From: Ramazzottius varieornatus
Taxonomy: Eukaryota; Animalia; Tardigrada
DNA: 63,847 bases
Assembly: GCA_001949185.1 (NCBI GenBank)
Contig: BDGG01000001.1
Coordinates: 8,279,220-8,343,066 of the forward strand
Direction: 5' to 3'
The notes under the pieces were generated by a model. It ran no database searches. It was not told where the DNA came from and saw only the letters and a program-made list of their open reading frames with translations. Both the position numbers and the translations under genes were made by a program. Shown piece after piece: positions 6,494-61,839 of the stretch; the first letter of the stretch is position 1, and each line of letters starts with the position of its first letter.

Positions 6494-9400
6494 CTAAAAA
6501 TGTCCAAGGTATGGCTTCTTCTCCAGACGGCTCTTCCCACTGAAAAGCAAAGAAAAACCACACCATGGATAAGGTTCCTACGTAGATTCAAGCAGGGTGT
6601 TCTTACTCATTGTCTTTGTAAATCTTGTAGTAGAAGTCGACAAGTGGCCCAGTGTTGGCCGTATTGAGGATATTGAGGAAGTCGGCGTCGTGGGTGATGA
6701 TGATCAGTTGGAACCTGTGACGTTGTTGTTCGTACTGCCGAGTTCGGATAAGCCTACGAAAAACAAACATATATTTCAGCTTACATAACAGCCAGCTGTT
6801 TTTGAACTAAGAGGGTCTCCAATGCGACTGACATACCGAGAAAGTGACTTCGCCAAGTGCTCGATGTTCTCGCGGTCCAGGTTTGTCGTCGGTTCGTCCA
6901 AAGCCAAAATGCCGCAGTTCAGAGCAAAAGCTTCAGCCAAAGCTAGCCGAATGATCAAGCAAGCCAACACCTGTCAACCAAGAATCCGAGATGAAAGGGA
7001 AGCTCGGCAGACGCATTCGACAGGATACTTTCTCCAAGTGGCGCACGCCTTTAGCCAACATCACCAAGAGCATGCGCCACTTGGGAGAACAATCAAACTC
7101 GACAGACTCGTCTTTCCAAGTGGCGCACGCTGTCAGTCAACGAAACAGAAAATGTGCGCCACCTGGGAGGACAATATTGTCGAGTTCGTTTGCCTAATTC
7201 TCAAATGGCTGGAAAAAATCCGATCAAGAGGGCCTTTATTTTATAAAGTCTGACTGCGATATTTTTCGCTTATGGTTCTGTGAATGTTACCCGTTGACCA
7301 GCACTGCAGCGACCTCGCATATCCAACGCTGTATCGCCACTGACCATCACAACCTGCAATGAAAAACCAATTTAGTTAGCTTTTAGCGAAAGTAGACTAC
7401 GGATGAAACGAGCAGTGGACAGGAGCTTACCCGATAGTTGTGGTTGCGTCGAGACTTCTCGCCTTCGATACCACTTTCGTCCGCGTCCGAGCGAATTTCC
7501 ACGTAGTCGATATCGTTGCCCTGATAGGTACTCTGCCACAATTCCCTCAAAATCTTGTTGATTTCCTCTACAAAACAACCCCTCAAGTATAAACTTACTA
7601 ATGTTGTTTTCAGCAAACCATAAAAAAAACTCACCCATTTTGACAGAGTGGAACTTCATAACAGCAAAGTCCAACGCCTTGTAAAACTTTTCCACGTCCT
7701 TCATCGCCAAATCTAGAACCTGCCCAACCAAAAAGACTTTAGTTTCATTCACCAACTATTTCACACTTCGATGTTTCTTTCTAACGGATTTGAGACCTAG
7801 CATACAGATTCGACCAGTTCATTTTTCTTCTGTGGCGCACAGCCCCAGCCAATAACACTAAGAACATGCGCCACTTCGACAAGCAACCAGACTCGAAACG
7901 ATAATTTTTTTCCAGGTGGCGTAAGTTAGCCGAAAACGTGCGCCACTCGGGAAAACTGACAAGATCGTCTACCCAAGTGGCGCACGCATTCAGCCGATAA
8001 CTGTGGTAACGTGCGCCACTTGGGAGACCGACCTGGTCGAATTTGTTCACTGGGCCGCAATTTGCCTCTTAGATAACTCACCTTGCATTTCTGGACAGCT
8101 TCGGAATGATACTTATCGGCATTCTTGTAGTAGTCCACTTCGAGCTCCTTCTGGCGCGACTTCATGGTCCGATCCAACTCTGTGAACCTTCCTTGCGACT
8201 TGTACAACTAAATCGGAACACAAGAAGGCCATTAGTACACAAGTCAACAACTTTCTTAGCTTCAAGAGAGTGCGCAAAGGGATGGAAGTAGGCGTGCCAC
8301 GTCTCAGTTCTCCAGTACCTCTTCGTTGCACTTGGTAAGACTGTCGAAAAGAGCCTTGCACTCCTCCTTCAGCTCGGGGATCTTGAACGTCTCAATGTGC
8401 TTGGTCAGTTCGTCAGATGTATGCTGATGCTTGGACAAATCGTCCCTTCGCTCGCGGAGTGTCAAGTTATCTTGCAGCGTCTGATCTCTCGTCTGTGAAA
8501 ATCCCAACACAAAAATATATCACGTATCAATCTTCATCGATTCGACAAGATCGTTTCTTCCAGTTGGCGCACACTCCTAGCGAATAAAACCAAAAACGTG
8601 CGCCACTTGAGGGAAAAATCTTGTCGAGTTTGTCTACCGGGATCTAAACACAGAAACAATTCAAGAAGCAAAAACTGTTTGGATTTTAGTGCATGACCTC
8701 ACTTTCGGGAAGACTTACCGCCACGTTGTCGAGTTCTTTTTCCGTCTTGTGCAGTTCCTCTTTCAGCGCCACTTGATCAGCTTCCTTGGCGGCAATGTCC
8801 GCCTTGATCGTTTCGGCATCTTCCTGGGCTGTCTTTAACTTGCTGGCAATATCCTTCCTTTCGTACCTGAAGACAGCAAAAGCACTATTAGATATTACAA
8901 TTTTCAGGAAGACGTTCGAAGCTTGCACTCACTCTTTCTCTCTAGCTGCGAACTTGGTCAAATCCTTCTGGCCGTCCTTCGAGGTCGACACCTTGTGCTC
9001 ATACTCCTTCAGATTCTCCGCAATGCGAGCTTGTACCATTCCACGATGCGTCGTGAACGTCTCGATGGACGTCTATTGAAAGAACATTCCACGAAGATGA
9101 ACAGAAATAACATACGACAGAAGGTATACTGCATACAGCGTACCACAGTGCACCCATCATCGCGCTGTATGCAGGCGGATGATTCATAAAAAAAACACCA
9201 CATGCATACAGGCACCGCAGTAAGTCTCATCAGAAGCTGTATGCAGGTGGGTGATTTCTGCACCGATTCTTACCTTCAACGGCTCGACTTTTGTCGTGTT
9301 ATCAGCCACTTCCTTCTCGGCGTTCTTGATCTCAGACGTCAGCTCGGTGATCTGGTGTTCCATCTTGAGGCGTTCTTGGAGCTTTTCGGAGATCTTGAGC

Positions 9401-12400
9401 TTCTGATCGCGGAAAGTGTTCAGCTCGTTCTTCAGCTTGTTCATCTTGTCCTCGTGCTTCGACAGAGTACTCCTGTCTTTCTCCAACGCTTCCTCAATCT
9501 TCTCGATCTCGGCCTCCATAGCTTCCTTCTCGGCTTTAATCACTTCTAACGTCCTCGGATCTAATAAGCGAACCAGATATCCAGGTTTAAGATACCATCA
9601 GCAAAGAAACTCAACAAGATCGTTTTCACAAGTGGCGCACACTGCCAGCCGACAGCACCGAAAGATTGCGCCACTTGGGAAAAACTAACTTGGTTGTTTT
9701 CCAAAGTAGCGCACGCTCTCGGTTCACAACACTAAACATGTTCGTCAAGAAATATTCCTCGAGAGATATTCGAATATGGTGTTATTTTAGAATTTTGAAT
9801 TCCTTTACCGGCTGATTTGTCGAGTTTGTTCGTCAGGTTGGTCATTTCCTTCTCGTTCTTTCTCAGGTCGTTCAAGAGACTGTCCAGCTTCATGGCGTCG
9901 GGTTGCGACGAAGCGCAGACCTGTTGCAAACGTCCCGAGACTTCAGCAGTGGTCTCCAAGTCTTCCTTCTCTTTCCTCAAAGCGCTAGCCTCTTCGACAA
10001 CTTTCTTCAGCTTGGCCTTCAGTTCTGCGTCCGTCTTCCTGAGACTGTCCAGCTTCTTGGCTTCAGGCATGAACGCCACAATCTTGTCGCGCTTCTCATT
10101 ACGGAGGGCGATCTTGGCTTGAAGCGTGCTAATCAGTGTGGGAACTTCCTTCAGTGTATTCTCAAGCTGGAAAAAACGAACAACATTCCAATCTCGTTCC
10201 CAAAATGGTTGATGAACGATCGCCTGTCATGTGAGAGATTCTCGAGCGGTAAACCTCCTTTGTCAGGAAAGCCGCATACACCGTGCGATACATTCAATAC
10301 GATACGCACGAGCATAGGTGCATGTCGCACCTAATGCGCCACATTGTGTGCACCTACCCGAAAACCGATCTGCATACATGCGCACCATGGCATTCGTACA
10401 ACTGAATGTATGCAGGTATGTGATATTTAATGGAATAACAATTTTCAGCTTCGCTGTTTCAGTTTGAGTTGTAGAGGATCGTTCTTACCTCTTCGGCCAG
10501 TTCGGTGGCTTCCGCAGGTTCAGCAAAGCCTCGATGGCAAGTAGGGCAGCACGGTTTCTCGACATCTTTCTTGAGCAAGATCTCTCGGTAGCCCTTCAAG
10601 ACGTGCGTCTTGCCCTGCCACTCGGCCAGTTCCTTCTGCGACTGCTGAATCTCATCGTCCAGCTTGCTCAGCGACTGATGAATGTCCACTCCGCTTGCGC
10701 TGGTCAGTTTTTCCAACTCTTCCTCGATGGTTTTGATTTTGGACTCGGTCTTCTCGATGTCCTTCTTCAAGCTAGCGCGATCTTGGTCTTTGAGGGCAAT
10801 CTTCGTCTCCGTCTTCGCCACAGCCTTCTTGGCTTCTTCCGCTGCCTTTGTCGAGTCTTTCGTCTCACGGTCCACTCGAGCTTTCAGTTCCTCGTTCGTA
10901 ACATTATCTGGAAATCAACCAACTTTAACTTTCAACCATCTGCATACCCCAAGTCCGCTGCCAATCATTATTGTTGTTTATGCAAGTGCGTGCAGAACGA
11001 AATGGCGACCACCTTACCGCCTATTCTGTCGAGGAAAGGTTGAAGTTTGCTTCGCTGCTTGTCCACCATTTCCTTCTTTTCAGCCTTCTGCTTCTCTAGC
11101 ACTTCAATCTTGGTAAAGAGTTCTTGCTGGCTTTCCTTCTTCTTGACGATGTCTTTCAGGTTCTTCATCTGCTCGTTGACGGCCTTCTTTCGGTCGGTCT
11201 GAGCGCTAATCTTTGTCTTCAACTCTTCGGTGTTGACCTCGCCCTTGGTCTGCTCGATCGTAGCCTCATGCGTCGCGATCTTGCCTTTGAAAAGTCAGAA
11301 GGCATGGTTAAATATCGAAACGCAAAAGAACGCCACCATCTCATAAACCTGCATACAACAAGTGCCGAGAAATTCGAGCATGCAGGTGCATGACAGACAC
11401 AAGCATTTTGCGTATTCTTACCTTCGAGGACGGTCAGCTTGCTGGTCTGGGCCTCCATGTCTTCCAGTTCCGCCTGGATTTCCTCTTTCTTCTGCTTCTT
11501 AGCACGGATATCTTTGTTGGTCTTGAGGATAGCCCTTTGCAGGTTTTCCAGCTCCTGTTTCTTGGACATGATGTTTTGAGTGATGGCTTCAACCTCCTCG
11601 TCGCCAGCTGCTTTCTGTTTCCTCAGCTCTTCTTCCGCTTGAGCCACGATCTCAGCGAAATCTTTACCGAAAGACTCAACTTCACCTGGCAAGTACTCCG
11701 GCGTATCCATATACACTACAAGAATATCAATTCACTTAGACCTGACATCCAGCACAACTCGCGCACACCTCCGAACACACAGCATCGGTTATGCGCAAGT
11801 TGACCAGTACTCGGCTATTCGTGACCACTCGCGCACAGTCCCGCGTATTGTGTAAAACAGTATGCGCAACCTCGTCCGAAATATCCATTTCCAGGAGAAA
11901 TTTAACAAAAACGAGGTGGTATATTTTTACACTGAACGTTTCTTAGTCCGAAAGGGAGCTTACTTTTCATGCCAAAGGTCGTGGCCAGCTGCTTCATCAA
12001 CGCGTCTCGTTCCTTTCCCATCTTCTCGTGCTGATCAGCGAGAGCCGAATACTGCCCGATCTCCGTGCTGGTAACCGAAGCTTTCTTCCGGAGCTCAATT
12101 AGTTTCTTGTCCAACTCGGTCGATCGCTTCTTTCCCTACCGAACCAAACCGTGAACACTCACACCACGTACAGAGAACTATTTCTGATTCCGAACAGAGC
12201 TTACTCGCTCAAGCGTCTTCTTCTGTTCGCCCACGACGTCCTTCGAGCTCTTGATCTCTTCTCGAAGTTCGTCCGTGGTCTTTTCGTACTCTTGACCAAG
12301 ACGCTTCTCCAAGTCAGCAATCTTGGCCTTGATGGTCTCCATCTGCATCTTCAGCTTGTCTGCAACCACACCAGACCTTCATAATAAACAGCATTTCTTC

Positions 12401-15185: not shown

Positions 15186-16880
15186 TTATTCATAGCCAAG
15201 AAGTTGTTTTGTAGTCGGATAATAATGCCCACGCGCGATAGATCGATCATAAGAATTAATCAACAAATTATTCACTAATTGGATCGACCGTGACAAGTCG
15301 CTCTCCTCGTCGATGGCGTCTTGTATACCACGTTTCAAATCTTTCATTGGGATGACATTGTCCCGATAGACTTGATGGATAGTATTTAGTTGATCCTTGA
15401 TTCTAGCATTGCTCTGGTCTTCTTCCTGATCCATGTTGGGCTTCTGTGCCCGAATGTCCAGTCGGGTCTCGGCCAGCATCAAAGGCCGGTTGTTGTCGTG
15501 GATGGCGTTCCGGAGGTTCAGGTAGTCCTTGGACATGCGTAACTTCTGCTCGTGGGTAGACTGTAACCGGGACATGTTGCAGTCTTTCCACTCGATGGCG
15601 GCGCGGCGACCCTTGATCACGTTGGCGATGACGTCGTCGCGAGCTTTCTGGATGCTGTCGGCGGTGAAAGCTAGGAGCCGGTCGCTGTCGCTGAGGTGCT
15701 TCAATGTGAGGTGCCGCATGCCTTGGGATCGTTTGATGGTTTCGTTTATCCGGTAGTTACTGTCGCCTTCCCTGCAATGAAAACCTCAACCGTTAAAAGG
15801 GCCTTATCCGAATAAGGGAAATGGGAGCTCGGCACACAAACCCATCAAAACTGCTTTTCAAGTGGCGCACGCTTCTGACCAATAACAGGGGGAATTGCGC
15901 CACTTGCGATGGTAATGTTGTCGAATTTCGCTTGCCGAGTACTCAAAGCAATAACAAACAATCTTCTTGACAGATTTCATGTCCATATTTCCGTTTATTT
16001 TCTTCAACTGAAATTTTCGGAAATTTCGAAAATTTTGGGAAGCAGAACTTGTGTATCGTACGGGTTATAATCCACGGATAGATTTCTGCCTTCGGCCAGA
16101 GGCTTGAAGGTGGGGAATCGTGAGTCGACTTTGAGAGCCAGCGATAGATGGTCGAGGTCCAGGGCGATCTTCTTGTCGCTCCACAGTTCTTCTAGCTGAT
16201 CGCGAATCTTATTAGCTTCCCTAAAACCAGACAGCATACTCGATCTTCGAGAAACATGCTGGAGACGCGAAACCCTGTCCGTTACATTTGTCGCTTCCGG
16301 TTCTCTTCTTGCATTTTGTACAGCTCATCGCTCCGTTCGATAATCGCATTGGCTTCCTGCAAACAGACGTCGTATATTCACTCTTCCAGATTTACCCTCT
16401 CCACCTTTCGAACCAACACTCGGATTCGATGTTTTGTAGTGTCAAGTGAGTCATTAGCGAAAACAAATCTCCGTTTCCACTTCTCTCCACGAGTGAACAT
16501 AACCCACGTTTTTGATACTTTGCATCATGTAGTCCGGAATGTCTTGATGGGCTTTGATCAGTAGGTTGACGATTTCATGGTTGATAGTCAGCGGTACTTT
16601 TGTCCAATGTATGGCTTCTCGAGCCCGGTTCGACATCACCTGCAGTATCTCGGTAATTGCTCCTGTAAATCACACACAGCCTCCCAGTTTATCTGCAAGG
16701 CAGCTCGGCCACTTCGCCAAACTTCGGTAACCCGGAATTCAGAGAAAACTTACGCCAAGCATAAATTTCAGCTGCCAACGCATTCTTCAACGTTCCGGAC
16801 TCCGTACATCGATTAGCCAGAGCATTTATTGTCTGATTTTCCTGCGTAGTCCACAGTCTTTTATAATCAGCGAGATCCAT
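15186..16880 (-). CDS. Tektin family protein (divergent, multi-exon)
   Basis: L...WSDKKIALDLD, LRNAIHDNNRPLMLAETRLDIRAQKPN (tektin PLK.A.TRL..R..RPN motif), C-terminal YYPTTKQLLGY. Confidence 0.8.
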
Positions 16881-19192: not shown

Positions 19193-20346
19193 TAGTGATG
19201 AGCACTACACGCAGATGGTCCGTGTAAAGTAGATTGTAATGTAAAATGGTGTGATTGTAAAATTTTAATTACATTTTACACCAGTTTACATTTTACAAAC
19301 CGAGTTGTTTATAACGTATAAAAGTGATATGGAGCGAGTAAAATGTCAGACCAACAACTACTGCGTTCGCACAAAACAGTTCTGTGCAATCGTTTTCCAG
19401 AAATAGATAAAAATACGGGTTTCAGTAGACATAAGCTTACGAAATGGCCGTATTGACGAAGTTTTTCACGACTGTCTAGTGATGTTCTAATATAGGTCAA
19501 TGAGATCTAATATAATAAAAATAAATATCCGCCGTCCATCAAAGTTCTAATAAGTGACCACTACTATAGGAAAGCGTCTACCTGATCTAATAAAGATATT
19601 ACTATAGTAGAACTTCCGGGGGGGTTTGTTATCAATATATATTTTAATATCGGAGAGCTAGACGGGAGATCTGAAAATTCAGAATCACAACCATCAGATC
19701 AGCAAAATTACTGCAGTACAGCTTGCACCATGCACCTGGACACTGTAACATGGCCGGTTAAAGTGTCTGACTGTATGTAGGTGCACGATGTTTAAGGGTA
19801 TTTATTTTGCAGTAGCCCTACTGTGCTGCTGTAGGGGCATCCTTATGGTGTGGCGCACCTTATAAGGCGTGGTCGCACATCGACAAACCAACGCACACGC
19901 ATCAGAACTCAGCAAATCAGCCAGTTTTTCGAATCAGCGGTAGCGTTACACGTATTGAAATATATTTTACTATAGATGATGGACAACTTCATAATAATAA
20001 AATATCGCACGCCCGGTTTCAAGCTACTAAAATATAAATATTGGAATGCGGTGCCCAGTTCTGTTTACTAAGTATTCTTAAATATACTAGATGCTCAAAC
20101 CATCTACTGTCATCTACTTTAATATAATATTACTATGTTAGACCATCACTACAATTGTCCTACGTAAATCAGCCGGGTTTAGATTTTTCGCGGCAAAACG
20201 CTCAAACATACCACAGATTTCCGGCTTGTAAAACGTGTAATTACATTTTGCATTTACATTACAACTTCCCGGCGGTTGTGATGTTGTGCAAAAGTGTAAT
20301 CGTGAGGTAAAATGTGATGTAATGTAAAATGTAATGCTCATAATTA
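19193..20346. mobile_element. Possible old non-autonomous hAT-like element
   Basis: Imperfect terminal inverted match TAGTGATGAGCACTACAC / ATGTAATGCTCATAATTA, with TGTAA/TTACA-rich subterminal arrays at both ends; no clear target-site duplication. Confidence 0.35.
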
Positions 20347-26146: not shown

Positions 26147-26922
26147 ATGGGAAATTTTGAAGCTACTTGATGAAACCGAGCATTTTCTTGAAGCCTGATA
26201 CTTTTCTGAAGCCTCTTCGCCAAGTTGTGATCTTTCCTTTACATTCTTGTACTATGCGATACCGTGATTTGTTTTTTGAATTCTTCAAGCTTTCAACAAC
26301 TAGGAAATTAACCGTTGATTTTCTTACTGAGAACGATATATTTGTCGATCAGTCAAACCGGCTTTACATGTTGATACCAGTGCCTAGTCGATCACTACCA
26401 ACTCGGTGTTGCCACTATATCCAGTCCATCCGTTGGTACGCTTGTTCGTGACGTCGAGTTGCACCTCCAGTTCTCATCCGCTAATGAGGCGGTGGAGAAC
26501 TGGTCAGTGCACCTTTCCCAGCGGTTCTTCGACGAAGTTCGCCGCTCCAGTTTGCTGGTCTCCTTACCAGAGCGTTTTAAGTTATGGACAGACGACGTAT
26601 CGCGAGAGTCTTCGACTTTTCAACTCCACGCCACCGCCGACATGGTAAGCCTTCGTCCCGCATAGGTCCGCGTCTCGCTTTCAAATCCTTTTGTTTCCTC
26701 AGAATTTCCCGTTGTGTAAATTATCACCAATTATTTATCTCGTATAAAGTTTACCCCAGTTTGGGGTTTAGCAATTTAAGTCGACAAAATTGTCTTCACA
26801 AGTGGCGCACGTTTTCAGTGCTGTTGGCGGGAAGCAGGCGCCACTTGAAAAGACTTGCTTGTCGATTTTGTCAGAATCGCCTCTCGGTCTTGGGTATGGC
26901 CGATCAAAGTTTTGCTTTTTAG

Positions 26923-46121: not shown

Positions 46122-49100
46122 TCACGACTTTGACTCTTTGTCCTTGTTGGGATCTTCTTGATCGATGTTTCTGAGCATATTTTCATCACTGAACTTCTGT
46201 AGATGGTCTAGCAGCATTTCGTTGGCTGTTAGGAGACTGAAATCAACCGAAGTTAAACTTGCGATACTCTCGCTGTCGTTGGGATCGTCATCTTCCTGGT
46301 TCGTGGCCCATTCAGCGAAGACGTCGTCGGTTTCCTCGCTGATGGTCCTTGTCCGTCTTTGGCTCTGTAGATCTTGAAGGGACAGCTGGATGGCTAGATC
46401 GAGGGCTGGATCACTTCCGCTGGGCGTTGGTTGAATTTCTGTCAATGAAAAATAATACTCGAGTAAATTCATTTCCCGTTCCACTCACCCATTTCAACTC
46501 GCGCACAAGTCCAGATAGTTTACTGCTCATGCGCGCAGGTCAGCAAAGTGGCCAAACACGCTGTGACCCAGCAAACTTGCGCATAAAATTCTTTATTGTA
46601 CCGTGGATGCGCGCTAGTTCACAAGACAAAGAAGGCTTTGGGAAAAATCTGCGGTAAGCGGAGTGGTTCAAAAAGTTGGCTACGCTTTCCTTACCTGCGG
46701 CAAGCAGTTTTAGCGGTGAACTTGATTCTTCGCCAGAGGAACTGGAAGAGAAAGACGACGCTCGGTTCTCCAAGTCCCGCTGCATCTGCAACCGTGATAG
46801 CTCCATGGCTATTAGAAGGTCCAACTTGTGCGAAGCCCGTTCACCGGAAGTGGTGGAGGTCGAAGGTTCTATAATACCATCATTCGTCTCATTACGGGTA
46901 CACTACTAAAACATCTTGCAATGTTTCTGGTTCCCCTTTTTGGGCTCTAGAAATAAGCAAACTTTACCTTGGTCGTCGATAAGGGCTGAAGCGGTCTCCC
47001 GTGCCAGGCTTTCGTGAAGTTTGTTACACCGGTACGAGCAATGACGATGAAAGATTTCCGTTCTTGGGTTCCTAACACACGGTCGACTGCATCCTGGACG
47101 AGCACAAGTGTTGCCTGAAATGAAGCAAAAATCCGTCGCCCTCGATATCTCAAAAATCGACATGAAACCGCAGAAAGTAGATATCACCTTCTACGGTACC
47201 GTAGACGGAAGTAGCAAAGAAGGAGGCAACGTCCTCATTCTCTTCGTATTCTGGCCAGTCATACAGCGCAGCCACATTAGCATGACGTCCGCGCTTGTCA
47301 ATCACCCAGGCGTTCTTCCCATCCAACATGGGCAGATCGGTCCCCGAAGCGCTATTACCTTCTTGTAGAACCTAAAAAAACAGAAAGAAACTCTTCAAAA
47401 ACAGGAAAACCCCGACTCTGGACGGTAGAATAGTGAAATCACAGAATTTCCCACCACATGCATACAAATAACTAGTGACACGCAGCAAAGATCTGTGTGC
47501 AGGTTCATGACAAAGCTGTTAACTTAAAGCTTAACCTGCATACAGATTACCAGTGGAACATGCGACCAGTCCGTATGCAGGTACGTGAGTGGATCATCAG
47601 CATTTTCGAAAAAGTTCGACCCAAAAGCTAAACCAATTACCACGTCGTCGAAGTCCATGCCGAAGAGTCCCGGCAAGTGTCTCTTCCTCTTCTTCCTGAT
47701 ACTGGGTGGCGTTTCGGGTATGATGAGACCTTTGCTGACAGCGACCACGAACTCGTGTCGTTTCCGTCGGACCAGCCTTGTTGCTCTCAGCACATCCTCC
47801 TTACAGGTCCGCAGGTATCTCACGGATATCATCTGGTCCAGCTTGTCGACGGCGGTCTCCAGTTCAGTCTGCATATACTCGAACAAAACGCGGTGGTCCT
47901 CGAGGTAGTACGCGTAAACGTACGAGCCTTTGAGGACTTTTCGGGCTTTGAGGAGCTCGAAGGAGGCGTCACGGAGAAAGACCAGCTGGTCTTCGGGAAC
48001 TTGCATGAAAGCGGAAAGAAGCATGATCTTGGTTTCGGTGTTATCGATGAAGGGCATCGATCGCTGAAGAAGGGAAAAAAACGTTTGGAAGGTGGATACA
48101 CCGGCTAAGACATGGTGGTTGTCCCAGGTGGCACACAAAGTCGGCCAACAACACAGAGAACGTGCGCCACTTCAGAAAGCAATCGTATCAAGTGGCGCAT
48201 ACTACCAGCTAAAAATACCAAGGCCACGCGCCATTTGGAAGAACATATCTGAAAAGATCGTTTCTTCAAGTGGCGCAAACTAGCATACAATAACATCAGA
48301 AACGCAGTCACTTGGGAAAAAACATCCTGGTTTGCCGAAAGTAGCAGTAAGATGGTTAGATGCGACTCTCGACCTTCCCCCATTTGTTGGAAACTGGTCA
48401 AGATGCAGACTCAGAGAAGCAGTATGAACATGCGAACGGATCAGATCTCTGTTAAAGTTTGTTGAGACAGCATTACTGTTCCCCGAAACAAACTCGACCG
48501 CGGTGGCAATTGCATGCGATCCATAGTCATATCCGTTTTACTGTTGCTGGACTCTGGGGTAGTACGACAGAAATTCACATACTACAGGATGACCATTGCC
48601 GTAGCAACGGTGGGGAGCATTATTCCCTCCATTACAAAATCCCGGGGTGAAACGCCGGCTGTATCGCATCCCGGGAGAACCTAATCCCGTGCTACACATA
48701 TCCCGGGATGGATAAATACCGTGATTAATACAAAAAACCCGGGAGCATGAGATATCGGGGAACCCTAATCCCGTGCTACGTATATCCCGGGATCGACAAA
48801 TCCCGGGGTATGTACAAAATAACCGGGAGGTTGAAATCCCGGAGGAATTTGATCCCTGTGTTTTTGTTCAGACCACCTCTGGAAACCGTAAAGCTCATTT
48901 GAATTTTATACACCGACTGTGGCTTATATCAGCTGTGTGACTTCGTTTGAGACTTGAGGGTTCGCACTCCCTCTACCTATCAGGTTTCCTTCACACTGAC
49001 ATGTTTCGGACCAGCGCGCTGACTGCTGTTGTACCGAGTGCGACCGTTGTAAATCGAATTCGTCACTTCATCCGGATATCCTTCATTCGGCCTCATCGCC

Positions 49101-52100
49101 TATCCTCAAAACGCTTCTGCAGTTTTCTGTCGTTTTTGTTTTGTGACTCTTCGCCACTTACTCTGTTTGAGTTTCTCCTGCAACTGCTGTGGGACATTTA
49201 CAATGTCTGACGATAGTGTACTGTATTCCCCCGATATCTTCGCGAACCCCGTTACTCATGGCGCCACCTACATGTTGTACATCATCCATACATACGCGCC
49301 CTATCTGCCGTACGTCATTTACGTTTCGTAGGTGGCGCCATGGGTATCAGGCTTCGCGGAGATATCGGGGGAATACAGTAGTTGTAATGGCCAACGATAG
49401 CGATCTAGACTGCATGGGTGAGCTGAAATTGCCGTCTGTTCCCGCGGCTCCAGATAGCTCTGAAGTTTTGACGTTCATCAAGTCTCAAAAAGCTGGAAGG
49501 ATCGCTTTCTACGCTGCTCAAAGCTACAGCAAAAATCAGGCTCTGGCGCAGGGAAGAGTCGCGGGGGAGTGATCCCGAGATTTTAGTCCACCGGGATTTT
49601 CGAAAATTACCGGGATTTTCGAAAATTTCCGGGATTTGAGTTTTACGAGATTTGCTGTCACCGGCATTAGCTATGTCCGGGATTGTAGTTTAACGGGATA
49701 TTTTATGATTTCACGGGATCTGGGTTACCCGAGATTTACTGCCACCGGGATTGCATCGCGGAAATAATGGGTCACGGGATACTGGAATCCCGGGATTTCG
49801 AACCGGTACCGTAGCAACATCTTCTGTTAAGTGGGTTGCAATAAGTTGCCAATAACCTTACTGGGTATAAGTTAAGTATTCGTAATCAATTTCCAATTTC
49901 AGTGGGTACCAATAACTAAAGTGGGTTGCACTGGGTGACAATAACCATTTCCAAAAAGAAATCCTGAAAGATTTTCGACCGAGCATTTTTCGACTAACCT
50001 TCAAAGCGTCGTCGCAGCTCTTAAACTTGCCGTAGTATTGGACAAAGCGGTTGAGTTCGTTCAGCCGTCGGTTCTTTTCTTCGGCAGCACTGATGAGCTT
50101 GCCGGCTTCTCCTTGGGCCTTGTTGACAGCGTCGAACCTTGTGCACCGGAAGTACCCGCCAGTCGCTGTGTTGTGCTTCTTCCAGGCTTCTGAGCAAATC
50201 CAGCAGAAGTCGTGCTTGCACTTTAGACACTTCATATGGTTACAACCTACCCGCAAAATCCAACCCTTCAATTTTGGACACCACGAACATTTTAGAAAAT
50301 TGACCAAAATATTCAAAATATATCCCTTGCCCAAAATTTGCCAAAAAATAGTACCGTCGGTTTTCTGAATGGGCGATTTGCATCCCGGACAAGGCTTCGA
50401 ATTTGTCACCAGCCACTGAAAAATGGAAGCGTCAGCTGAAATTTATGTGCTGTAATTATGAAAACTCTGCGAATAGACGCCACTCGGTATGACTGTTTTC
50501 TAGAGGGGCGCATGTTTGCAGTGTTATTGGCTGAAAGCGTGCGCCAATTGGAGAAAACGCTCTTGTCGAGTTGTTTGCCTAGAGCTCGTATCATGTCGAT
50601 TATTGAGTCGATGTTCACGTGGAGCTATGGATCAACTTACGAGCGAGTTAGCAGCTTCTTCGAGCGCTTCGCGAGTTCCGCGGACTGTAAAGAAGGCGTC
50701 GTTATGATCGCTATCAGTGATTATAGCTGGGTATTACGTGGCTAATCATGCGCGACTGTTTAATGGTCTCTTACTTTCTTCTGGTTTAACATCGACGATG
50801 CGCTGGTGCCACTCGCCCCACTTGCCACAGCTGCATGGCTCGTGCGCGTCGCCCGCACAGCCCCAGCAGAAGTAATGACCGTTACCGCAGTCAACTGCCT
50901 GCGAAGTTTCCAACGGTGGCTTCATATGCGGGACAGGAACGATGTTTGGAACGGGCACTTCCGGTCGACAGACTGCGCGACCACAACCCGCGAAGGGACA
51001 CCACTTCATGCTCGGGTTACTCTCTACAAACGCCTATCACAAAGAGCAATGATATCCTGAACTGAGACATCGAAATACCCAACAAAACACATCAGGCTAT
51101 CGGAAGCAAGGATAAATCTGAATAAACGGAAGCTCGACAGACAAGCTCGGCAAGATTGTCTACCCCAGTGGCGCGCGTTTCCTCTGTATTCCGCCGAAAG
51201 CGTGCGCCACTTGGAAAGACAATCTTGACGAGTTTGTTTGTCGAGCTCTGAAATTTCGATTTAAGTTTTTTGAATGAAAGAAATACTGTAATGTGCGTAA
51301 AGCATTTTGAATGTAAGAAAACAGACAAACCTCAATGTCGAACTGAAGGTATTTTCTGGCCACATCGCGAGAAATCAAACCTTCGACCACATCACAAGGA
51401 ACCAAGATTGAGCAGGCGAAGTCGGGACAAGTAATCGGGTAGATTTGACCAGTTTCAATCTTGATGGTCAAATACCTACAAAATCCACAAACCCATACAA
51501 TGAGAAACAAGGACGGAGACTTGCTGGGAATATGGATACTTACTCTCTCCAGCAAGTGCGACAAAAGTCATGTTCGCAGGCCAAGTATACGGGTTCTTCG
51601 TCCTGAGGAACCTCGTTGGCGCAGATGGTACACTACGGAACACAATTCAATTACGGAAATCATCCCTTAACAAAATGAGACTCTGTAGCGGAGGCCTGCG
51701 TCGCTTACCATTGTGTTGAGTTTTCTGATGAGGACACGCTTGGGACTTCCCAGTTCCAGGTCGGGCGAATCCACAGCTGAGAACTTCTTGCGTCTGCGTA
51801 GGCTCTCCGGAGGTTTCACCCCGGCATTCGTGCAACACAACACGGCGTTACTTAACCATGCGTCAAGCAAGGTCTGTCGAGACCATTCTAGAACGGATAA
51901 GCACATATTCGGAACGCTGACATGAGACTTGAAACGAGCGTTCTGCCAAGCGGCGCACACAGTCATTCATCCACACTGGAAAAGTGCGCCACCTGGGAAA
52001 ACAATCAAACTGGATAGAATCGTCTTCCCAAGTGGCGCACGGTTTCAGCCAAGAACAGCGCAGACTCGCGCCACTTAAGATAATTCGAACTTACGAAAGG

Positions 52101-53271
52101 TTCGAAGGAGCGCCTCCGCTGTGAAGAGTGGAACATGCAGCATGTCGGAAGTCTCCACCACCAACTGATCCTTCTTATGCTGAATTTCCTGAGCTTTCAT
52201 CCCGTCGAAGGTCTAAAGAACAAGCTCAACAACCCATTAAAATGAAATCTCGGTATTAGGAGTTTAGGAAAGGATTTTACCGCTGTATGGTTGATGGCCC
52301 AGTCTTCCACTTCTTCCTCGTCCGGGTTTTGCGATGTCAAAACGAGTATCTTCGACTCCAGATACCTCGCCACCGATTCTTGCCCGTATCGGTCGGCTGT
52401 GTCGATGGGTGTATCACCTACATCGTTCTTTGCTCGGAGCATTTCGGGAAGTTCACTCACGATTTCCTGAATCGCAAAGTAAGAAATTAATACTATTCAC
52501 ATCACAAATGATGCGGCAGTTCATCTGGATCACAAACAAATGTCGGTGGAAATCCTGTGCCCATAATCAGGGAAGAGAACGACACACCAACCTCGGCAAG
52601 TTCCAAAAATCCATGAGCGGCTGCGTTATGAAGAGGAGTATTCCCATGCTGGGAAAAAACCACAAAAAGAAACAACTGCAAAAGACTAAAAAGAAACAAA
52701 TATCTTGAGATCGTTTTTCCAAGTCACGCACGTTTCCAGTTAACTCACTGAAAACATGCGCCACTTAGAAAACAAGTTTTCTAGAAATAATCTGGTTTAA
52801 TTCGCGCCTACCAGATCTTTAGCCAAGTAGGCTTCCCGAACGGCTACCACACCGTCTATGGTTCCTCTCGAAGTCAAGATCAACTTCAAGCATTTATGTT
52901 TCGTATCGCCGCGGTACTGCGGATGGTCCTTCAGCAGCCACGACGGCAGGCGACACAGGCAGTGCAACGGATTCTCCTGCAGCGCGTTGGTACGGGCTAA
53001 GTCCACCGGATACTCGTTCAAAAACGTCCTGCGAAGAGATCACAACTTCATAACTCATTTGGGCGGAAAAGGAGGGAAACATGTACCTCATCAGCGTCTC
53101 CATTCCATGTAGACAGACCAGGTGGAATGGTGAGCAGCCATCATTCTTCTCATAATTCTCTCGGATGTCCAAACGCTTCCGAAACTCATCGTGGGCTTTG
53201 AGTAACTCCAAAGCACCTGGCTCGTCACCTTGGCTCAGCCTCTTGCGGAGTTGAGAGCGATGATTACCCAT
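46122..53271 (-). CDS. ANKIB1: Ankyrin repeat and IBR domain-containing RBR E3 ligase
   Basis: MGN..LRK.L..GDE start, ankyrin repeats ([12 protein letters not shown]), RING1, IBR ([12 protein letters not shown]...[10 protein letters not shown]...HEPC), RING2 ([31 protein letters not shown]), Ariadne domain, UIM-like LAIQLSLQD. Confidence 0.9.
48609..49808. mobile_element. 1.2-kb non-autonomous Mutator/foldback-like element in an ANKIB1 intron
   Basis: Direct repeat CCGTAGCAAC at 48599-48608 and 49809-49818; ATCCCG arrays at the left end mirrored by CGGGAT arrays at the right end; internal FLYWCH-like fragment [22 protein letters not shown]. Confidence 0.75.
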
Positions 53272-55860: not shown

Positions 55861-56184
55861 AAACACGACATAACAGATGAGAGGTCGGGAAACGATACGT
55901 ATAAGACCGTTGTCGTAAGTGGCGCACGCCACTAGCCTAAGACAATGACAAAGTGCGCCATTTGAGCCACGATATGATCGTTTTTATAAGTGGCGAACGC
56001 CACCGCTGACAAGTAGCTTGCGCCATTTGAAAAACGATTTTGTGGAGTTCTCCAGTGTTGCACATTAACAATGTTCCAGACTGAAAACGTGTGCCACTTG
56101 GCGAGTTTGTTCGGCTCGGTCTCATTTCCCTTTTTACAAACCTGCAAGACCAGTCGCACCATCGACTATCTTCCGAGCTCCGCC

Positions 56185-56920: not shown

Positions 56921-58250
56921 TACATACCATGATGGATGATGGCAGGAATGTCAGGGACTCTCTATTCTAGAAATCTTTCTCAGAAGACAGGGCGAGACAA
57001 GAAAAGAAGCGACAATCGTCTAGTCGATACAGAGAACTGTATCATCATCAGCCACCTTTAGTGACTGCGCTTCTGAAAGCGCTTACTCATCCAAACGGGA
57101 AAATAAGGCCGAATTGGGCAGTTTCCCTGTGTCTCTGTCTGTGTTCAGTGCCACGTCGCATTGATTGTACGTTGTTGATTAGACTTCCGGTTGAAACCTC
57201 AGTTAAACTCTGTTCTTTCAGATTGTTGTGATTTTGCTTGTGCCTAATTGTGGCTCTCAGAATCTGTAGGCACCTGGAACCTGGAACAGCCTGGCTGCTT
57301 GAGGATCACAATGGGGAAGAAGCAGCATCAAAACGACAAGCTGTACTTGACGACGACAGAATGGAGCACGACATACGGAGGTCGAGCAGCGAACTGGCCA
57401 GTCTTCCTGGACAAAGCACGTTCCTTCGCTTCAAAAGGATACCTTCCAACTTCCGTGCTTGGTCACTTCATCCATTCGAGAATCACTACATGGCACCGGC
57501 TAGTTACGTTTTTGACCTAACGTTAGTACAAGATGTATACCTCCCGTAGAAACGGTAAAATGGCAGCCAGGTAATAAAAAGTTGACGAACCAAGTTTATT
57601 GATAGTTCATTTATCTGCATACCATTGTATCAGTTTTTCGCGTCTCTGTGTATGTAGGTACCGGATCATCACATCGTGCATAAGACTCAGCCTTATTATT
57701 TTACGTTCCAGAAACATTTTGCCCTCTGTAGAGAAATACGGAACTCATCCCGTAACCGGCGAACCTCTTTAGGCAAAATCCTTGACAAGTTAAACCAGGA
57801 CAACAATTCTGAAGGTATTGCGGAAAGGCGAAAAAGTCGCTCGTATGGTCAGAGAATCGTCACCGATCGTTTACAATATGCAGCCATGGCGCTGCGCAAT
57901 AGCCAATGTGGCAAAGATTGGTTCCCGTCAGTGTTATTTTATTATGACTTGCGACTGTGCGAACTGACGCCTTTGTTTTGCTGGTATGATGAGAATCGGA
58001 TCATGGTGGTATGCGCTGCTACAGTACAGACTTGACAACAGTGAAGCAAAATGGCGTACGCGACGAAGAGTGAACATATGAGCGTATTACTGTAAATTCA
58101 AAATGGCGCTAATGGGATAAAGCATGGACTGAGTGAAACTAATGATGAACTGAAAATTCCGCCGGCGTAATAATGGCTCCAGGCTATGACGAAAATCTGA
58201 AATAAATAAATACATTCTTTTTATCACATTTGAAATACAGACATATACAG

Positions 58251-59260: not shown

Positions 59261-61839
59261 TCTGAACTGTTCCAGTACCTTTGGAGCGTTCACGACCTTT
59301 CGCCATGTCAGATTTCAGAAAACTTTGTAAGAGCACCGAGAATTCAGAACCGTACGAAATGACGGGGCCTTTGTGTTGCACATGGTCAAAGTCTGGTTCG
59401 GTCTGTACTGTTTGTGACGTATCACCTTGTGTGAATTCAGGATGATTCGCGGCAACTTGCCCTCGGCGCTCGTGTTCAAATCCGGTCTCTGACGTATTGA
59501 AGTTACTGCAGAGGACATTGTATACAGTGAAAACTGCAGGATGAAAATAGTACCTTTGATGGGGAAGTTCTTGCTGGCTCAAGCGCGTGCAACCTGTCCA
59601 GGGCGTGACGCTGCGGGAATGTGTTTCCATTACGTTCAGTTCTATAAACTTAGTTGATTAATTACAACAGCAGTTTTGGGTTTCAGCGCTAGAGTGGATC
59701 AGTGTTCCTACCACGTGTGTACTTATGCTTACTCAGTTCTCATGTTTACGTACATTTCAGTACGAGGTAGCCGGCATGGAGATGTCCAGCGAATTTTTTC
59801 GGCGTGGAGATATCCAGGCCTGATCGTAGCAATTATTGCCTCACACTACCTTTTCTCGGTTCCTGAATCAAGAAAGACTTGTCTTTATTCTTCTACGACA
59901 AATCAGAAGCTCAGAGGTAGCAAAACTGGTGAGATATCTACCTTGGAAGGGATACAATGTTAAAGGGGGTGGGATACAATGTTAAAGAGCCTATTTGACG
60001 TACTATGATCAAACAATCAGACCTTTGGAGAAATGCTCCGTGGATATTTCCATGCCGGAAATTTCACTGGACATCTCCATGCCGGCTACCTCGTGTTGTT
60101 TTCGTATCCACCGCCAAATTTTGGCGAAATTATCTTCCCAAAAATAATTTCTGTAAATCCCACATAGGGGAAAATCTTCCTTCGCAAAGGGGCAGGTGGT
60201 CAACCAAAGGGCGACGACTGGTCAACCGTCAATTGTGGGTGCGCAGAGGTGCGCGTTGCTTATTGAATGCCCCTCATCAAACCCAACAACTTGATCTCTT
60301 TAGACGCGATCTGGGACTCACACAAGGAAAGTACCAAGTCCGAAATGATTTTTTCTTATGTCATGTGGCTTTTCTTGCAGATAACTCTTATGGTTACAGT
60401 GATAATCCTCACTTCTTTAGTACGTCACAAAGCGGGTTTCGACACGCTCAAGTGTGCCAGTTAGTAGTTTGCGAATGGCAAACTTATATGCGTCATCACA
60501 GTCATGCGACAACTGGCCGTGCTGACGAGCGGCATCACCGGCTTTTTTCTACGCTTGTTTGAGTCTCTAGAAACAAATTTGAAGCTCTTCGCACATTCTT
60601 TAACACGCGGCTCTGCCTGTGACGTACTAAAGAAGTGACGATTACTACTGTAGTGGTCACTACAATTCTGTCGGCAGACTTTGAAGGCTTATGCTACAAA
60701 CCTTTACTTCACCTGTTGCAGTTGTTCAGAGACACCAGAGTGGTCCTCCGTCAAGCTGCAACGGACAGCGTCAACGCGGCCAACTTCTCCACCGGCCATG
60801 TCGCGGCAGGTTTCACCTCCACCGTCATGGTACCCATCACATACCAGACAGCAGGTAAGCAATACAGCCTGTTCCAGTCAGGTTGTCCGTTCCGAATTTG
60901 CGTTACCCTTTCATATCAACTTGTGCTCTGTATGATACAATCGGTCTGCGAACGTAGAAGACCGCTTTGGAAACCTATCTTGAAACAAGGTCGTTTTGAC
61001 ACGTCAACTCACTCTGCTTGTACGAGTAGCCGTAAAACAGAATTCAGAGTTCTCACTCCGTCAAAACAAACATAATTTTTTTGTATACGCAGTTAAGAAG
61101 ACAACTGTTTTCGTAGTGTGTCGAAAGAAAAGTTTTGGTTAGAAAGTCAAAACGACGCGAGATGTGAAATACAAATTAAAATATTGAAGTGCCACCCCGA
61201 TCAACTGGCGCGCATTTTTTTGCGTCGGGCAGTAAACAGACGTGGAACTTTTCCACCTGTCTCCTGACCCACATTATCGATAGCTTTTCGGCCGTTCTTG
61301 TTCTCAAACGGTTCCAGAGGGCTGAAGCAACGATGAAAACACTTGAAAGAGGCGGAAACATCATTTGGTCAGAACAAGCGAATTTTTGATTGAGCGGGAA
61401 TAACTTGGCTGGAACGGGCTGTAATATCCTTGACTAATGATCTTGAAATACTGTCCAGTTTGATTATACTGGTGTAATGAATTGAGCATGATCGTCTGCT
61501 CAAGTGGCGCAGGCTTCCATTGTTACTGGCCGGCAGCGTGCGCCGCTGGAAAGGCGATGATGTTTCTAAGTGGCGCGCATCTTTAGCCACTAACAATGGA
61601 GGCGTGCGCCACTCGAGATGATGGTCGTTCAATTACAGTACATGATAGTGGTCCACGATAGTGAATTATATTGATGGTGTTGAACTGATAGTGCTCAGTT
61701 ATGGATAGTGTGTGATTGATGGAAGTATGCTGGAGTGGAGTGTTTTCTTAGGTTTCAAAGACTTGTGATAATTTCATCAAGAACTGTTGAAGTGGATACT
61801 ACACCAACACGATATTCTACCAAGCTTCCTTGCCCGTTA

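What the first reader, a model, noticed from the sequence alone, without database searches (positions are those of the whole stretch)
7003..61620. Three-class system of fixed-spacing inverted motif pairs that fills the introns
Seen: three families of inverted 10-mers share the pattern AnnnGCRYAC (A: AGTGGCGCAC, B: ACCTGCATAC, C: ACTCGCGCAC). Each has a characteristic gap counted by hand: 25 nt for A, 29-30 for B, 24 for C. They occur singly or as doublets/triplets with a period of about 70-80 bp. They are present in introns of most multi-exon genes here, account for most introns longer than ~150 nt, and are nearly absent from the TE-rich flanks and the promoters. A given intron generally holds only one class. 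Inference: conserved half-sites and spacer length with freely varying spacer sequence is the signature of sites for a dimeric DNA-binding protein or a recombinase/transposase, or of a selected pre-mRNA hairpin, rather than neutral decay. This could be an undescribed gene-body marking system (chromatin, germline licensing, splicing) co-opted from MITEs. An established analogy is the MITE-derived fixed-spacing motif pairs at Caenorhabditis germline promoters.
Basis: partly seen in the sequence, partly recalled or inferred. Interest (0 to 1): 0.9.

Follow-up and report, generated by a model that had tools for sequence, protein, structure and literature searches.

The report
Old intron-dwelling palindromic repeats with protected cores
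Two families of very old, tiny palindromic jumping-gene relics fill the longer introns of this tardigrade's genes, and their paired inner motifs have decayed about three or more times more slowly than the rest, so they are probably still recognised by something in the cell.

Summary
The motif pairs are real. Genome-wide there are 1,143 exact class A pairs, 916 of them at gap 25, and 245 exact class B pairs at gaps 27-32; reversed controls gave 0. Class C is marginal, about five loci genome-wide.

Class A is the inner part of a ~123-bp palindromic MITE with a 4-bp AWWT target-site duplication, in roughly 13,500 units. It is ancient: about 27% diverged, star-like, with no close relatives anywhere in the genome. 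Its 10-mer cores are only about 10% diverged. A decay simulation and one-arm ascertainment show this is not a detection artefact. The A spacer is not free; it keeps a ~70% consensus. Class B spacers are at random-level identity, yet the arms are ~87% identical and the spacing holds to ±1.

Copies are strongly intron-enriched by my rough gene models: 70% (A) and 92% (B) of non-exonic copies, against a 24% baseline. They explain about 58% of window introns over 150 nt.

I found no orientation bias, no transcript-arm asymmetry, no wobble excess in the cores and no compensatory changes there. This favours sequence-specific recognition of kept sites over a selected RNA hairpin. Function is unproven.

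An earlier follow-up in this scan (s1-789778) reached the same core result on other DNA.

The parts
7001..7196 (.). class A doublet (AA) in a RAD50 intron (gene on - strand)
   Evidence: nhmmer 71 and 88 bits; core pairs at gap 25; predicted intron 6971-7290 or 6971-7430
7800..8052 (.). class A triplet (AAA), RAD50 intron 7720-8081
8540..8641 (.). class A single, RAD50 intron (about 8493-8718)
   Evidence: 76 bits; RNA fold -42 kcal/mol, z -4.9; sequence read
9129..9255 (.). class B doublet (BB), RAD50 intron 9073-9273
9598..9747 (.). class A doublet, RAD50 intron 9561-9808
10363..10424 (.). class B single, RAD50 intron 10167-10488
   Evidence: 34 bits, gap 30
10932..10992 (.). weak class B-like unit, RAD50 intron 10908-11017
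   Evidence: 12 bits only
11341..11394 (.). class B single with shortened spacer (gap 21), RAD50 intron 11285-11421
11757..11875 (.). two class C units (A-like variant, gap 24, imperfect partner arms), RAD50 intron 11716-11963
   Evidence: fold -27 kcal/mol, z -4.2; class is rare genome-wide
15826..15939 (.). class A single, intron 15772-16061 of a tektin-family gene (-)
19729..19786 (.). weak class B-like unit outside any predicted gene
   Evidence: 14 bits
23891..24077 (.). class A doublet, predicted intron 23848-24114 (+)
25705..25892 (.). class A doublet, predicted intron 25552-26380 (+)
26769..26871 (.). class A single, predicted intron 26645-26922 (+)
29357..29473 (.). class A single, predicted intron 29225-29514 (+)
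33275..33437 (.). class A doublet, predicted intron 33233-33497 (+)
33885..34002 (.). class A single, full length, predicted intron 33860-34059 (+)
35017..35285 (.). class A triplet, predicted intron 34986-35372 (-)
36783..36920 (.). class B doublet, predicted intron 36692-36972 (+)
37266..37443 (.). class A doublet, predicted intron 37237-37504 (+)
38418..38520 (.). class A single, predicted intron 38380-38561 (-)
38812..38941 (.). class A doublet, predicted intron 38777-39011 (-)
40816..40923 (.). class A single; no gene predicted by my model, but long + strand ORFs flank it
41463..41630 (.). class A doublet; no gene predicted by my model, flanked by + strand ORFs
42558..42723 (.). class A doublet, intron 42465-42761 of an NAD-dependent epimerase/dehydratase gene (-)
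43609..43786 (.). class A doublet, intron 43568-43866 of the same gene
44279..44347 (.). class A single (core part only), predicted intron 44238-44377 (-)
45568..45680 (.). two weak class B units, predicted intron 45525-45734 (+)
   Evidence: 15-16 bits
46497..46545 (.). single class C-like unit
47450..47589 (.). class B doublet, predicted intron 47372-47640 (-); no BLAST relative elsewhere in the genome
48109..48338 (.). class A triplet, no gene predicted there by my model
50482..50581 (.). class A single, intron 50416-50640 of an IBR/RBR-type E3 ligase gene (-)
51131..51247 (.). best-kept class A copy in the sample, predicted intron 51034-51708 (-)
   Evidence: 96 bits; folds as a ~55-bp hairpin, -82 kcal/mol, z -12; best other copy in the genome is only 79-83% identical
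51926..52083 (.). class A doublet with the same 37-nt linker as 7001-7196, predicted intron 51888-52094 (-)
52698..52775 (.). class A single, predicted intron 52467-52811 (-)
55882..56105 (.). class A triplet, predicted intron 55937-56188 (-)
57613..57659 (.). weak class B pair (one mismatch per arm, gap 27)
61476..61626 (.). class A doublet, no gene predicted there by my model

Best explanation
Class A is an ancient, non-coding, ~123-bp palindromic miniature DNA transposon (MITE). It has GGG...CCC termini and a 4-bp AWWT target-site duplication. It amplified essentially once, as monomers and as a dimer form, to about 13,500 units, roughly 2-3% of this 55.8-Mb tardigrade genome. It entered pre-existing introns, and its copies now lie mostly there.

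Since that burst every copy has decayed independently by about 27%. The inverted inner cores (effective core TGGCGCA within the 10-mer) have decayed only about 10%, and the 25-nt spacing has suffered about half as many indels as the arms. Class B is a second, smaller family of roughly 2,000-4,000 units. It shows the same signature more strongly: arms ~87% kept, spacing 29/30 kept, spacer at random-level identity. I infer that it is older. Class C is a rare A-like variant.

The most likely reading is that the inverted cores are kept recognition sites for a sequence-specific, symmetric (dimeric or tetrameric) nucleic-acid-binding protein. That would make them MITE-borne cis elements retained by the host or protected by occupancy.

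Shown: the anatomy, copy number, age, star-like descent, slower core decay, kept spacing and intron enrichment. Inferred: that a protein recognises the cores, and any downstream role.
For: Anatomy. The consensus and HMM give a 117-nt model plus GGG/CCC ends. Flanking 4-mers match at 2.22 of 4 positions against 1.71±0.15 for shuffled pairs, with 0 of 500 shuffles as high, and only at the offset just outside the termini.

Copy number. There are 8,676 exact half-sites, and about 32% of cores are exact in the sample. That gives about 13,500 units.

Age and descent. Non-core divergence is 0.28 (sd 0.063, binomial expectation 0.048), and no copy is below 0.14. Pairwise identity is 0.562, against 0.561 for a simulated star phylogeny. 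The best genome-wide relatives are 77-83% identical. The same search finds 88-100% copies of younger repeats in the window. The 29 best hits to a 33%-diverged copy carry the consensus state at 67% of its 32 private variants. They share those variants at 18.6%, against a 13.2% background.

Slower core decay. Identity is 0.893 in both cores, 0.73-0.74 in the outer arms, 0.72 in the 5 nt next to the cores and 0.695 in the spacer (118 copies). A uniform-decay simulation with the same detection gives no contrast. When one arm is exact, the other is 91% identical, and the gap is 25 in 90 of the 102 partners with at most 2 mismatches. The core CpG is 1-5% diverged, against 15-44% for CpGs elsewhere. 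The transition/transversion spectrum is similar inside and outside the cores. Non-core G/C columns are not better kept than A/T columns.

Spacing. The spacer is indel-free in 75% of copies, against 58-59% for equal-length arm segments.

Symmetry. Loop orientation against gene strand is 27:31. Core decay is 8.7% on the transcript's 5' arm and 9.4% on its 3' arm.

Class B.

Intron location. Counts (intron/other/exon) are 58/25/1 for A and 12/1/0 for B, against an intron baseline of 24% of non-exonic bases (p = 2e-18 and 4e-7).
Against: No binding, chromatin, expression or cross-species data could be obtained. The sample for fine analysis is 264-353 kb, holding 84-159 class A copies and about 22 class B copies. 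The ratio of core to non-core decay is the same in predicted introns and elsewhere (0.34 against 0.39), so the constraint is not visibly tied to being intronic. A centre-to-centre distance of 35-40 bp is long for a simple dimer. Purifying selection on about 13,500 sites is a heavy demand. An unknown local mutation or repair bias, such as protection by an occupying protein without function, would give the same pattern. My gene models are home-made, so the intron shares are approximate.
Confidence: 0.5

Rival explanations
1. Ordinary decaying MITEs with no present function. On this view the better-kept cores reflect constraint at the level of the element: only copies with intact inner sites could be mobilised during a long period of activity. 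Alternatively they reflect a local mutation or repair bias. The intron excess would come from insertion preference for transcribed DNA, or from faster loss of old DNA between genes in a shrinking genome.
For: The units are transposon-derived, with a TSD and terminal palindrome. The dimer form was itself amplified. Core decay is not bimodal: the mean is 1.9 mismatches per 20 positions with variance 1.2, so there is no class of 'released' copies. The core to non-core ratio is the same inside and outside predicted introns. Divergence among copies is somewhat over-dispersed. The genome is half the size of its relative's (PMC5531438), which fits preferential loss of old intergenic DNA.
Against: The descent is star-like and variants are private, which leaves little shared lineage time in which element-level selection could act. 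No sister copies were found genome-wide with a method that does find young repeats. CpGs and G/C columns outside the core are not protected, and the substitution spectrum is unchanged. Class B arms and spacing are kept although the spacer is saturated.
Confidence: 0.28
2. Selected pre-mRNA hairpins. The transcribed palindromes fold in the intron. They would then shorten the effective intron, hide cryptic splice sites, or feed a small-RNA or RNA-binding-protein pathway.
For: Copies lie mostly in transcribed introns. Well-kept copies fold into long, very stable hairpins (-82 kcal/mol, z -12), and the kept cores form a GC-rich apical stem. A perfect inverted repeat gives the same arm sequences in either orientation, so the lack of orientation bias does not exclude this. 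On the sense strand of the non-core stem, G-U pairs slightly exceed A-C (179 against 131, p = 0.007).
Against: In the cores the counts are G-U 33, A-C 24 and other mismatches 35, with no significant wobble excess. Compensatory double changes in the core are essentially absent. Overall there are 128 against 87 expected, mostly in the outer arms. Outer-arm pairs are broken in a quarter to a half of copies, so the basal stem needed to bring intron ends together is not kept. There is no 5'/3' arm asymmetry of the kind a processed small RNA would give. The small non-core wobble excess is what transcription-associated mutation bias would give (my inference). There is no Rfam match in the window.
Confidence: 0.15
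3. Introner-like elements. On this view the insertions created the introns they sit in.
For: Earlier first-stage notes on this genome propose such cases for other elements (for example s1-806941). Introns with a copy are much longer than those without.
Against: Copies sit inside introns, a median of 84 nt from the predicted 5' splice site and 56 nt from the 3' splice site. After subtracting the copies, the intron remainder has a median of 120 nt. That is close to the 102-nt median of element-free introns. The element consensus ends well inside the intron and carries no splice sites at its termini.
Confidence: 0.03

Closest known systems
CERP2/CELE2 MITEs carrying m1m2 motif pairs in Caenorhabditis (Carelli et al. 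2022, PMC9757741)
   Same: These are high-copy MITEs whose inverted repeats carry a motif pair at characteristic spacing. There are thousands of copies, and the motifs are under purifying selection relative to their neighbours. They are bound by a transposase-related (THAP-domain) protein, HIM-17.
   Different: In Caenorhabditis the functional copies are germline promoters upstream of genes, and two different motifs are 12-28 bp apart. Here the copies are intronic, the pair is one motif in inverted orientation 25-30 bp apart, no binding factor is known, and no promoter activity has been shown.
Sola-superfamily MITEs, the classification given by the earlier follow-up s1-789778
   Same: Class A is a short non-autonomous DNA transposon with terminal inverted repeats and a 4-bp flanking duplication. 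Sola elements are reported in tardigrade repeat libraries (PMC11071193).
   Different: I could not retrieve the defining description of Sola1 termini and TSD. I found no autonomous partner with matching ends, so superfamily membership is not established here.
Bacterial REP/REPIN elements
   Same: They are pairs of short inverted palindromic units separated by a spacer. They are dispersed in hundreds to thousands of copies, and the cores are better kept than the spacer. This comparison rests on my own knowledge and is an analogy only.
   Different: REP/REPIN elements are bacterial and intergenic, and they are maintained by ongoing mobilisation by a RAYT transposase. Here the copies show no recent duplication and lie in eukaryotic introns.
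Introner elements and introner-like elements
   Same: Both are repeated, structured elements associated with many introns of unrelated genes.
   Different: Introners make up the whole intron and supply or recruit the splice sites. These copies sit in the middle of otherwise normal-sized introns.

Membership tests
MITE (miniature inverted-repeat transposable element) | Short (<~600 bp), non-coding, with terminal inverted repeats | tested here: met
   Class A is a ~123-bp palindrome with conserved complementary ends. No ORF is possible at this length.
MITE (miniature inverted-repeat transposable element) | Target-site duplication flanking each copy | tested here: met
   For class A, 4-bp AWWT flanks match at 2.22 of 4 positions against 1.71±0.15 for shuffled pairs, only at the correct offset. 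Class B was not tested: too few copies and no defined ends.
MITE (miniature inverted-repeat transposable element) | High copy number from amplification of one or a few sources | tested here: met
   About 13,500 class A units with star-like descent. For class B, common descent cannot be shown, because the spacers are at random-level identity.
Sola1 group of DNA transposons | Group-specific TSD and termini, and a Sola1 DDE transposase in autonomous relatives with the same ends | tested here: inconclusive
   A 4-bp TSD and GGG...CCC termini were found. The published definition could not be read, and no autonomous partner was sought or found.
Introner / introner-like element | The element spans the intron and provides its splice sites; the intron is absent before insertion | tested here: not met
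   Copies are internal to introns. The remainder has a median of 120 nt, against 102 nt for element-free introns. Ancestral absence of the intron could not be tested.
Co-opted MITE cis-regulatory motif pairs (CERP2/CELE2 type) | Motifs evolve more slowly than the surrounding element | tested here: met
   Core identity is 0.89 against 0.70-0.74 elsewhere, with controls. This rests on within-genome copies only and not on orthologous sites.
Co-opted MITE cis-regulatory motif pairs (CERP2/CELE2 type) | Bound by a specific factor and required for a regulatory output | not testable with these tools
No ChIP, ATAC or reporter data are available.
Structured RNA family (miRNA-like or other Rfam family) | Match to a curated model, or covariation that keeps the pairs | tested here: not met
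   No Rfam match at gathering score in the window. No compensatory changes and no significant wobble excess in the cores. No arm asymmetry.

The most novel reading that the evidence does not exclude
The inverted cores of classes A and B are the working sites of a genome-wide cis-element system unique to this tardigrade lineage. Two waves of MITEs seeded some 15,000 symmetric binding sites, mostly in gene bodies. Dedicated, perhaps transposase-derived, proteins still read them, for example to mark or insulate transcribed genes, license germline expression or organise chromatin. This would be a gene-body counterpart of the MITE-derived germline promoters of Caenorhabditis.
Probability: 0.3. Interest if true: 0.85.

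Novelty: new variant of a known kind. Interest (0 to 1): 0.6.

Why it matters
The repeat libraries of this model extremophile are still mostly unclassified (PMC11071193), and I found no description of this family in the searched papers.

These units are a main determinant of intron length here. Introns with a copy have a median of 268 nt, against 102 nt without.

If the slower decay of the cores reflects recognition by a protein, this would be one of the largest sets of transposon-seeded, still-constrained sites in a compact animal genome. It would also sit in introns and not at promoters. The factor could be identified directly with a 45-bp probe, and the sites could be tested with the genome editing already established for this species (PMC11175437, listed).

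If it reflects only a repair or mutation bias, it would still be a clean natural example of site-specific mutation protection.

Tried and rejected
- **RNA reads.** There is no evidence on expression, splicing or small RNAs.
- **More genome sample.** One genome search still yielded thirty 3-kb loci; later ones did not.
- **Metagenome scan.** The scan for the class A pair returned two unrelated contigs, one at 64% GC, with no flank homology. It gives no information on other tardigrades.
- **Gene-structure proxies.** Three proxies failed before the final one. Codon-bias windows were too sparse. Self-training collapsed. ORF bridging across each element gave a 73% hit rate on reversed sequence. Anchor exons gave significant but uncalibrated enrichment.
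- **Final gene models.** The final home-made splice-aware parser has a 0.4% exon and 1% intron false rate on reversed sequence. It finds only 21% exon, against 35% published (PMC5531438). The intron shares are therefore lower bounds.
- **Joined proteins.** Pfam was run exon by exon, by reference.
- **Sola1 definition.** I could not find it in the held papers.
- **Rejected: biased gene conversion or GC content** as the cause of core conservation. Non-core G/C columns are not protected.
- **Rejected: arm-to-arm correction within a palindrome.** It would give compensatory doubles in the core, and none are seen.
- **Motif resemblances recalled from memory** were left as leads only: CTCF-like GGCGC, an NK2-like site, an E-box and a Su(Hw)-like TGCATA in class B, and CCAAT in the class A loop.

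Full report
**Where the window lies.** The window is G000:C1:8279220-8343066 of a 55.84-Mb, 200-contig assembly. Earlier notes of this scan identify the animal as a tardigrade. The size matches the 55.83-Mb Ramazzottius varieornatus assembly in PMC5531438.

Exon-wise Pfam hits identify ordinary host genes in the window. I saw the RAD50 ATPase signature by eye.
- RAD50 (zinc hook), about 6.5-14.2 kb on the minus strand
- a FOP-dimer protein
- a tektin
- a FoP-duplication protein
- an NAD-dependent epimerase/dehydratase
- an IBR/RBR E3 ligase

**1. The observation.**
- The three 10-mers occur 25, 10 and 3 times exactly in the window, against 0.13, 0.05 and 0.09 expected.
- Allowing one mismatch per half-site in 264 kb (the window plus 200 kb from C1:1.0-1.2 Mb), inverted pairs pile up at gap 25 for A (35 of 42 pairs within gaps 22-27). 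For B they pile up at 29/30 (10 of 12). Everted and direct arrangements show no such peak.
- Genome-wide, the A 10-mer occurs 8,676 times, against 47 for its reversed control.
- Exact A pairs at gaps 10-40 number 1,143, of which 916 are at exactly 25; the control gives 0.
- Exact B pairs number 245, control 0, at gaps 27-32 and mostly 29 or 30.
- An unbiased scan for any 8-mer paired with its reverse complement recovers only A and B.
- Class C does not hold up as a class. A relaxed pattern finds about five loci in the genome. Its 10-mer differs from A at two positions, and its partner arms in the window are imperfect.

**2. What class A is.** Aligning copies with their flanks shows that the motif pair is the centre of a long palindrome.
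- An iterated nhmmer model of 117 positions finds 84 copies in 264 kb, 47 of them in the window.
- The consensus extends three more bases at each end (GGG...CCC). It is then flanked by A-W-W-T, beyond which composition is background.
- The flanking 4-mers of a copy match each other at 2.22 of 4 positions, against 1.71±0.15 when partners are shuffled (0 of 500 shuffles as high). This happens only at that offset. It is a 4-bp target-site duplication, so class A is a MITE.
- The spacer is not free. Once copies are oriented it has an asymmetric consensus kept at about 70%, and the two orientations are equally common.
- About 32% of cores are exact in the sample. The 8,676 exact half-sites therefore imply about 13,500 units.
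- 47 of 52 exact half-sites in the sample lie inside detected copies.
- Doublets and triplets outnumber singles in the window: 12 AA and 4 AAA against 11 A.
- The doublet with a 37-nt linker recurs at 30 or more loci at 72-78% identity over about 180 bp. The dimer was therefore amplified as a unit.

**3. Age and descent.**
- Non-core positions are 28% diverged from the consensus. The range over copies is 0.14-0.40, with sd 0.063 against 0.048 for pure sampling. This indicates one old era of amplification.
- Pairwise identity among copies is 0.562, against 0.561 for a simulated star phylogeny. The nearest neighbours are no closer than simulated ones.
- In the whole genome, the best relative of the best-kept copy is 79-83% identical, and that of a doublet is 77%.
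- For a copy 33% diverged outside its cores, all 39 candidates were scored, and the best reach 78% over the central 87 bp.
- I fetched the 29 best hits to that copy. At its 32 private non-core variants they carry the consensus state 67% of the time. They share the variant 18.6% of the time, against a 13.2% background. The variants are therefore private.
- The same search method readily finds copies at 88-100% identity for younger repeats in the window.
- The divergence of class A copies therefore arose in place, after insertion.

**4. The cores really are better kept.**

| Region (118 copies not selected by similarity) | Identity to consensus |
|---|---|
| Each 10-mer core | 0.893 |
| Outer arms | 0.73-0.74 |
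| The 5 nt next to the cores | 0.72 |
| Spacer | 0.695 |

- Simulated copies with uniform decay, detected with the same model, show no contrast.
- With one arm required to be exact, the other arm (not selected) is 91% identical. It sits at gap 25 in 90 of the 102 partners with at most 2 mismatches. The eight ungapped positions just outside the core are about 70% identical.
- The CpG in the core is 1-5% diverged, while CpGs elsewhere in the element are 15-44% diverged.
- Non-core G/C columns are not better kept than A/T columns, and the transition/transversion ratio is alike inside and outside the cores.
- The spacer is indel-free in 75% of copies, against 58-59% for arm segments of equal length.
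- The slowest positions are TGGCGCA.
- Given the star-like descent, element-level selection during transposition cannot easily explain this.

**5. RNA or DNA?**
- The asymmetric loop faces either way relative to the gene, 27 sense and 31 antisense.
- Read on the sense strand, imperfect core pairs split into 33 G-U, 24 A-C and 35 other, which is not significant. Non-core pairs give 179 G-U against 131 A-C (p = 0.007). That is a modest skew of the size expected from transcription-associated mutation bias (that reading is my inference).
- Compensatory double changes total 128 against 87 expected, almost all in the outer arms. There are 0-2 per pair in the core.
- Outer-arm pairs are broken in a quarter to a half of copies.
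- The core on the transcript's 5' arm is 8.7% diverged and the one on the 3' arm is 9.4%.
- Well-kept copies fold into very stable hairpins, but nothing indicates that pairing as such is what is kept.
- What is kept is a specific sequence, symmetrically. That fits recognition by a symmetric protein on DNA, or on a duplex stem, better than a selected RNA fold.
- Because the arms of a perfect inverted repeat read the same in both orientations, sequence-specific recognition of the RNA cannot be excluded.

**6. Class B.**
- The arms are about 18 nt, with the 10-mer in the middle and a weak TCA further out.
- With one arm exact, 19 of 25 sites have a partner with at most 3 mismatches. Partner identity is about 87%, and the gap is 29 or 30 in 14 of 15.
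- Spacers of equal length have a mean pairwise identity of 0.34 against 0.31 for shuffled ones. This rests on few copies. The flanks show no palindromy.
- A B doublet has no BLAST relative anywhere in the genome, though common words are skipped by that tool.
- By eye, the roughly 50 exact-pair spacers listed share at most a faint trace of common sequence.
Either it is a much older family whose arms and spacing alone were kept, or its origin is unknown.
- It is the least explained part of the finding.

- On reversed sequence it.4% exon and 1% intron. On the real 264 kb it genes, 21% exon and 19% intron. The published figures are 35% exon and 22% intron, so genes are missed.
- By these models, 58 A copies lie in introns, 25 elsewhere and 1 in an exon. 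For B the counts are 12, 1 and 0. Introns make up 24% of non-exonic bases (p = 2e-18 and 4e-7).
- Several 'elsewhere' copies are flanked by long same-strand ORFs, so the true shares are probably higher.
- Introns with a copy have a median of 268 nt, against 102 nt without. After subtracting the copies, the remainder has a median of 120 nt. The copies therefore entered normal introns and did not create them.
- In the window, 25 of 43 predicted introns over 150 nt carry A or B, against 3 of 58 shorter ones. The RAD50 intron with the two C units adds one more.
- No intron mixes classes, but only about 2.5 mixed introns were expected.
- The ratio of core to non-core decay is similar inside and outside predicted introns.
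- The cause of the intron excess is open: insertion bias, better survival of old DNA in introns of a shrinking genome, or function.

**8. Comparison and novelty.**
- The closest described system is the CERP2/CELE2 MITE pair of Caenorhabditis. Its m1m2 motif pairs are under purifying selection, are bound by the THAP-domain protein HIM-17 and act as germline promoters (PMC9757741). The tardigrade units differ in being intronic, in pairing one motif with itself in inverted orientation at 25-30 bp, and in having no known factor.
- The tardigrade repeat-curation paper leaves most R. varieornatus consensus sequences unclassified and does not mention introns or this family (PMC11071193).
- Within this scan the thing has been found before. 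Follow-up s1-789778, on other DNA of the same genome, called class A an abundant Sola1-type MITE of about 12,000 units whose inner motif decayed about three times more slowly. My independent numbers agree. I could confirm the 4-bp duplication but not the superfamily.
- Many first-stage notes describe the same palindrome in other windows.
- What this report adds:
  - the test of private variants and the genome-wide search for relatives
  - one-arm ascertainment
  - the wobble, arm-asymmetry and orientation tests
  - the intron statistics
  - the demotion of class C
  - the description of class B

**Verdict.** The claim of slower-evolving, fixed-spacing inverted cores is supported by several controls. 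The functional reading is plausible but untested.

Noticed in passing
window 1-2686: Positions 1-1400 have copies 99-100% identical on four other contigs, which points to a recently active repeat. Positions 1388-2686 have a 95% copy at C1:7953483.
   Followed up: partly
window 3175-4124: A ~950-bp dispersed repeat family with 30 or more copies at 71-86% identity.
   Followed up: no
window 19476-20153: A ~675-bp dispersed repeat with 40 or more copies at 83-92% identity. It is much younger than class A and lies outside predicted genes.
   Followed up: no
window 26923-27765 (+): A 280-aa ORF that contains a 15-bp tandem repeat (6.2 copies, 27541-27633) and so encodes a Gly/Tyr-rich repeat. It has no Pfam match.
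   Followed up: no
window 48672-48847, 49590-49637, 58324-58382: Three short tandem arrays: 84 bp x2, 19 bp x2.5 and 17 bp x3.5.
   Followed up: no
window 6500-14200 (-): The RAD50 gene is split by 21 or more predicted introns. Five carry class A, four carry class B and one carries the two class C units. Its element-free introns are 66-111 nt.
   Followed up: partly
window 7082-7118 and 51994-52030; L003 around 2380: Class A doublets share one junction type. A truncated right outer arm is fused to a left outer arm through a 37-nt linker. The same dimer recurs at 30 or more loci genome-wide.
   Followed up: partly
L021-L050 (30 loci of ~3 kb around class A copies): Besides the 30 targeted copies, these 92 kb hold about 45 further class A copies, roughly 0.5 per kb. 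The unselected 200 kb holds about 0.18 per kb. Copies are therefore clustered in certain genes or regions.
   Followed up: no
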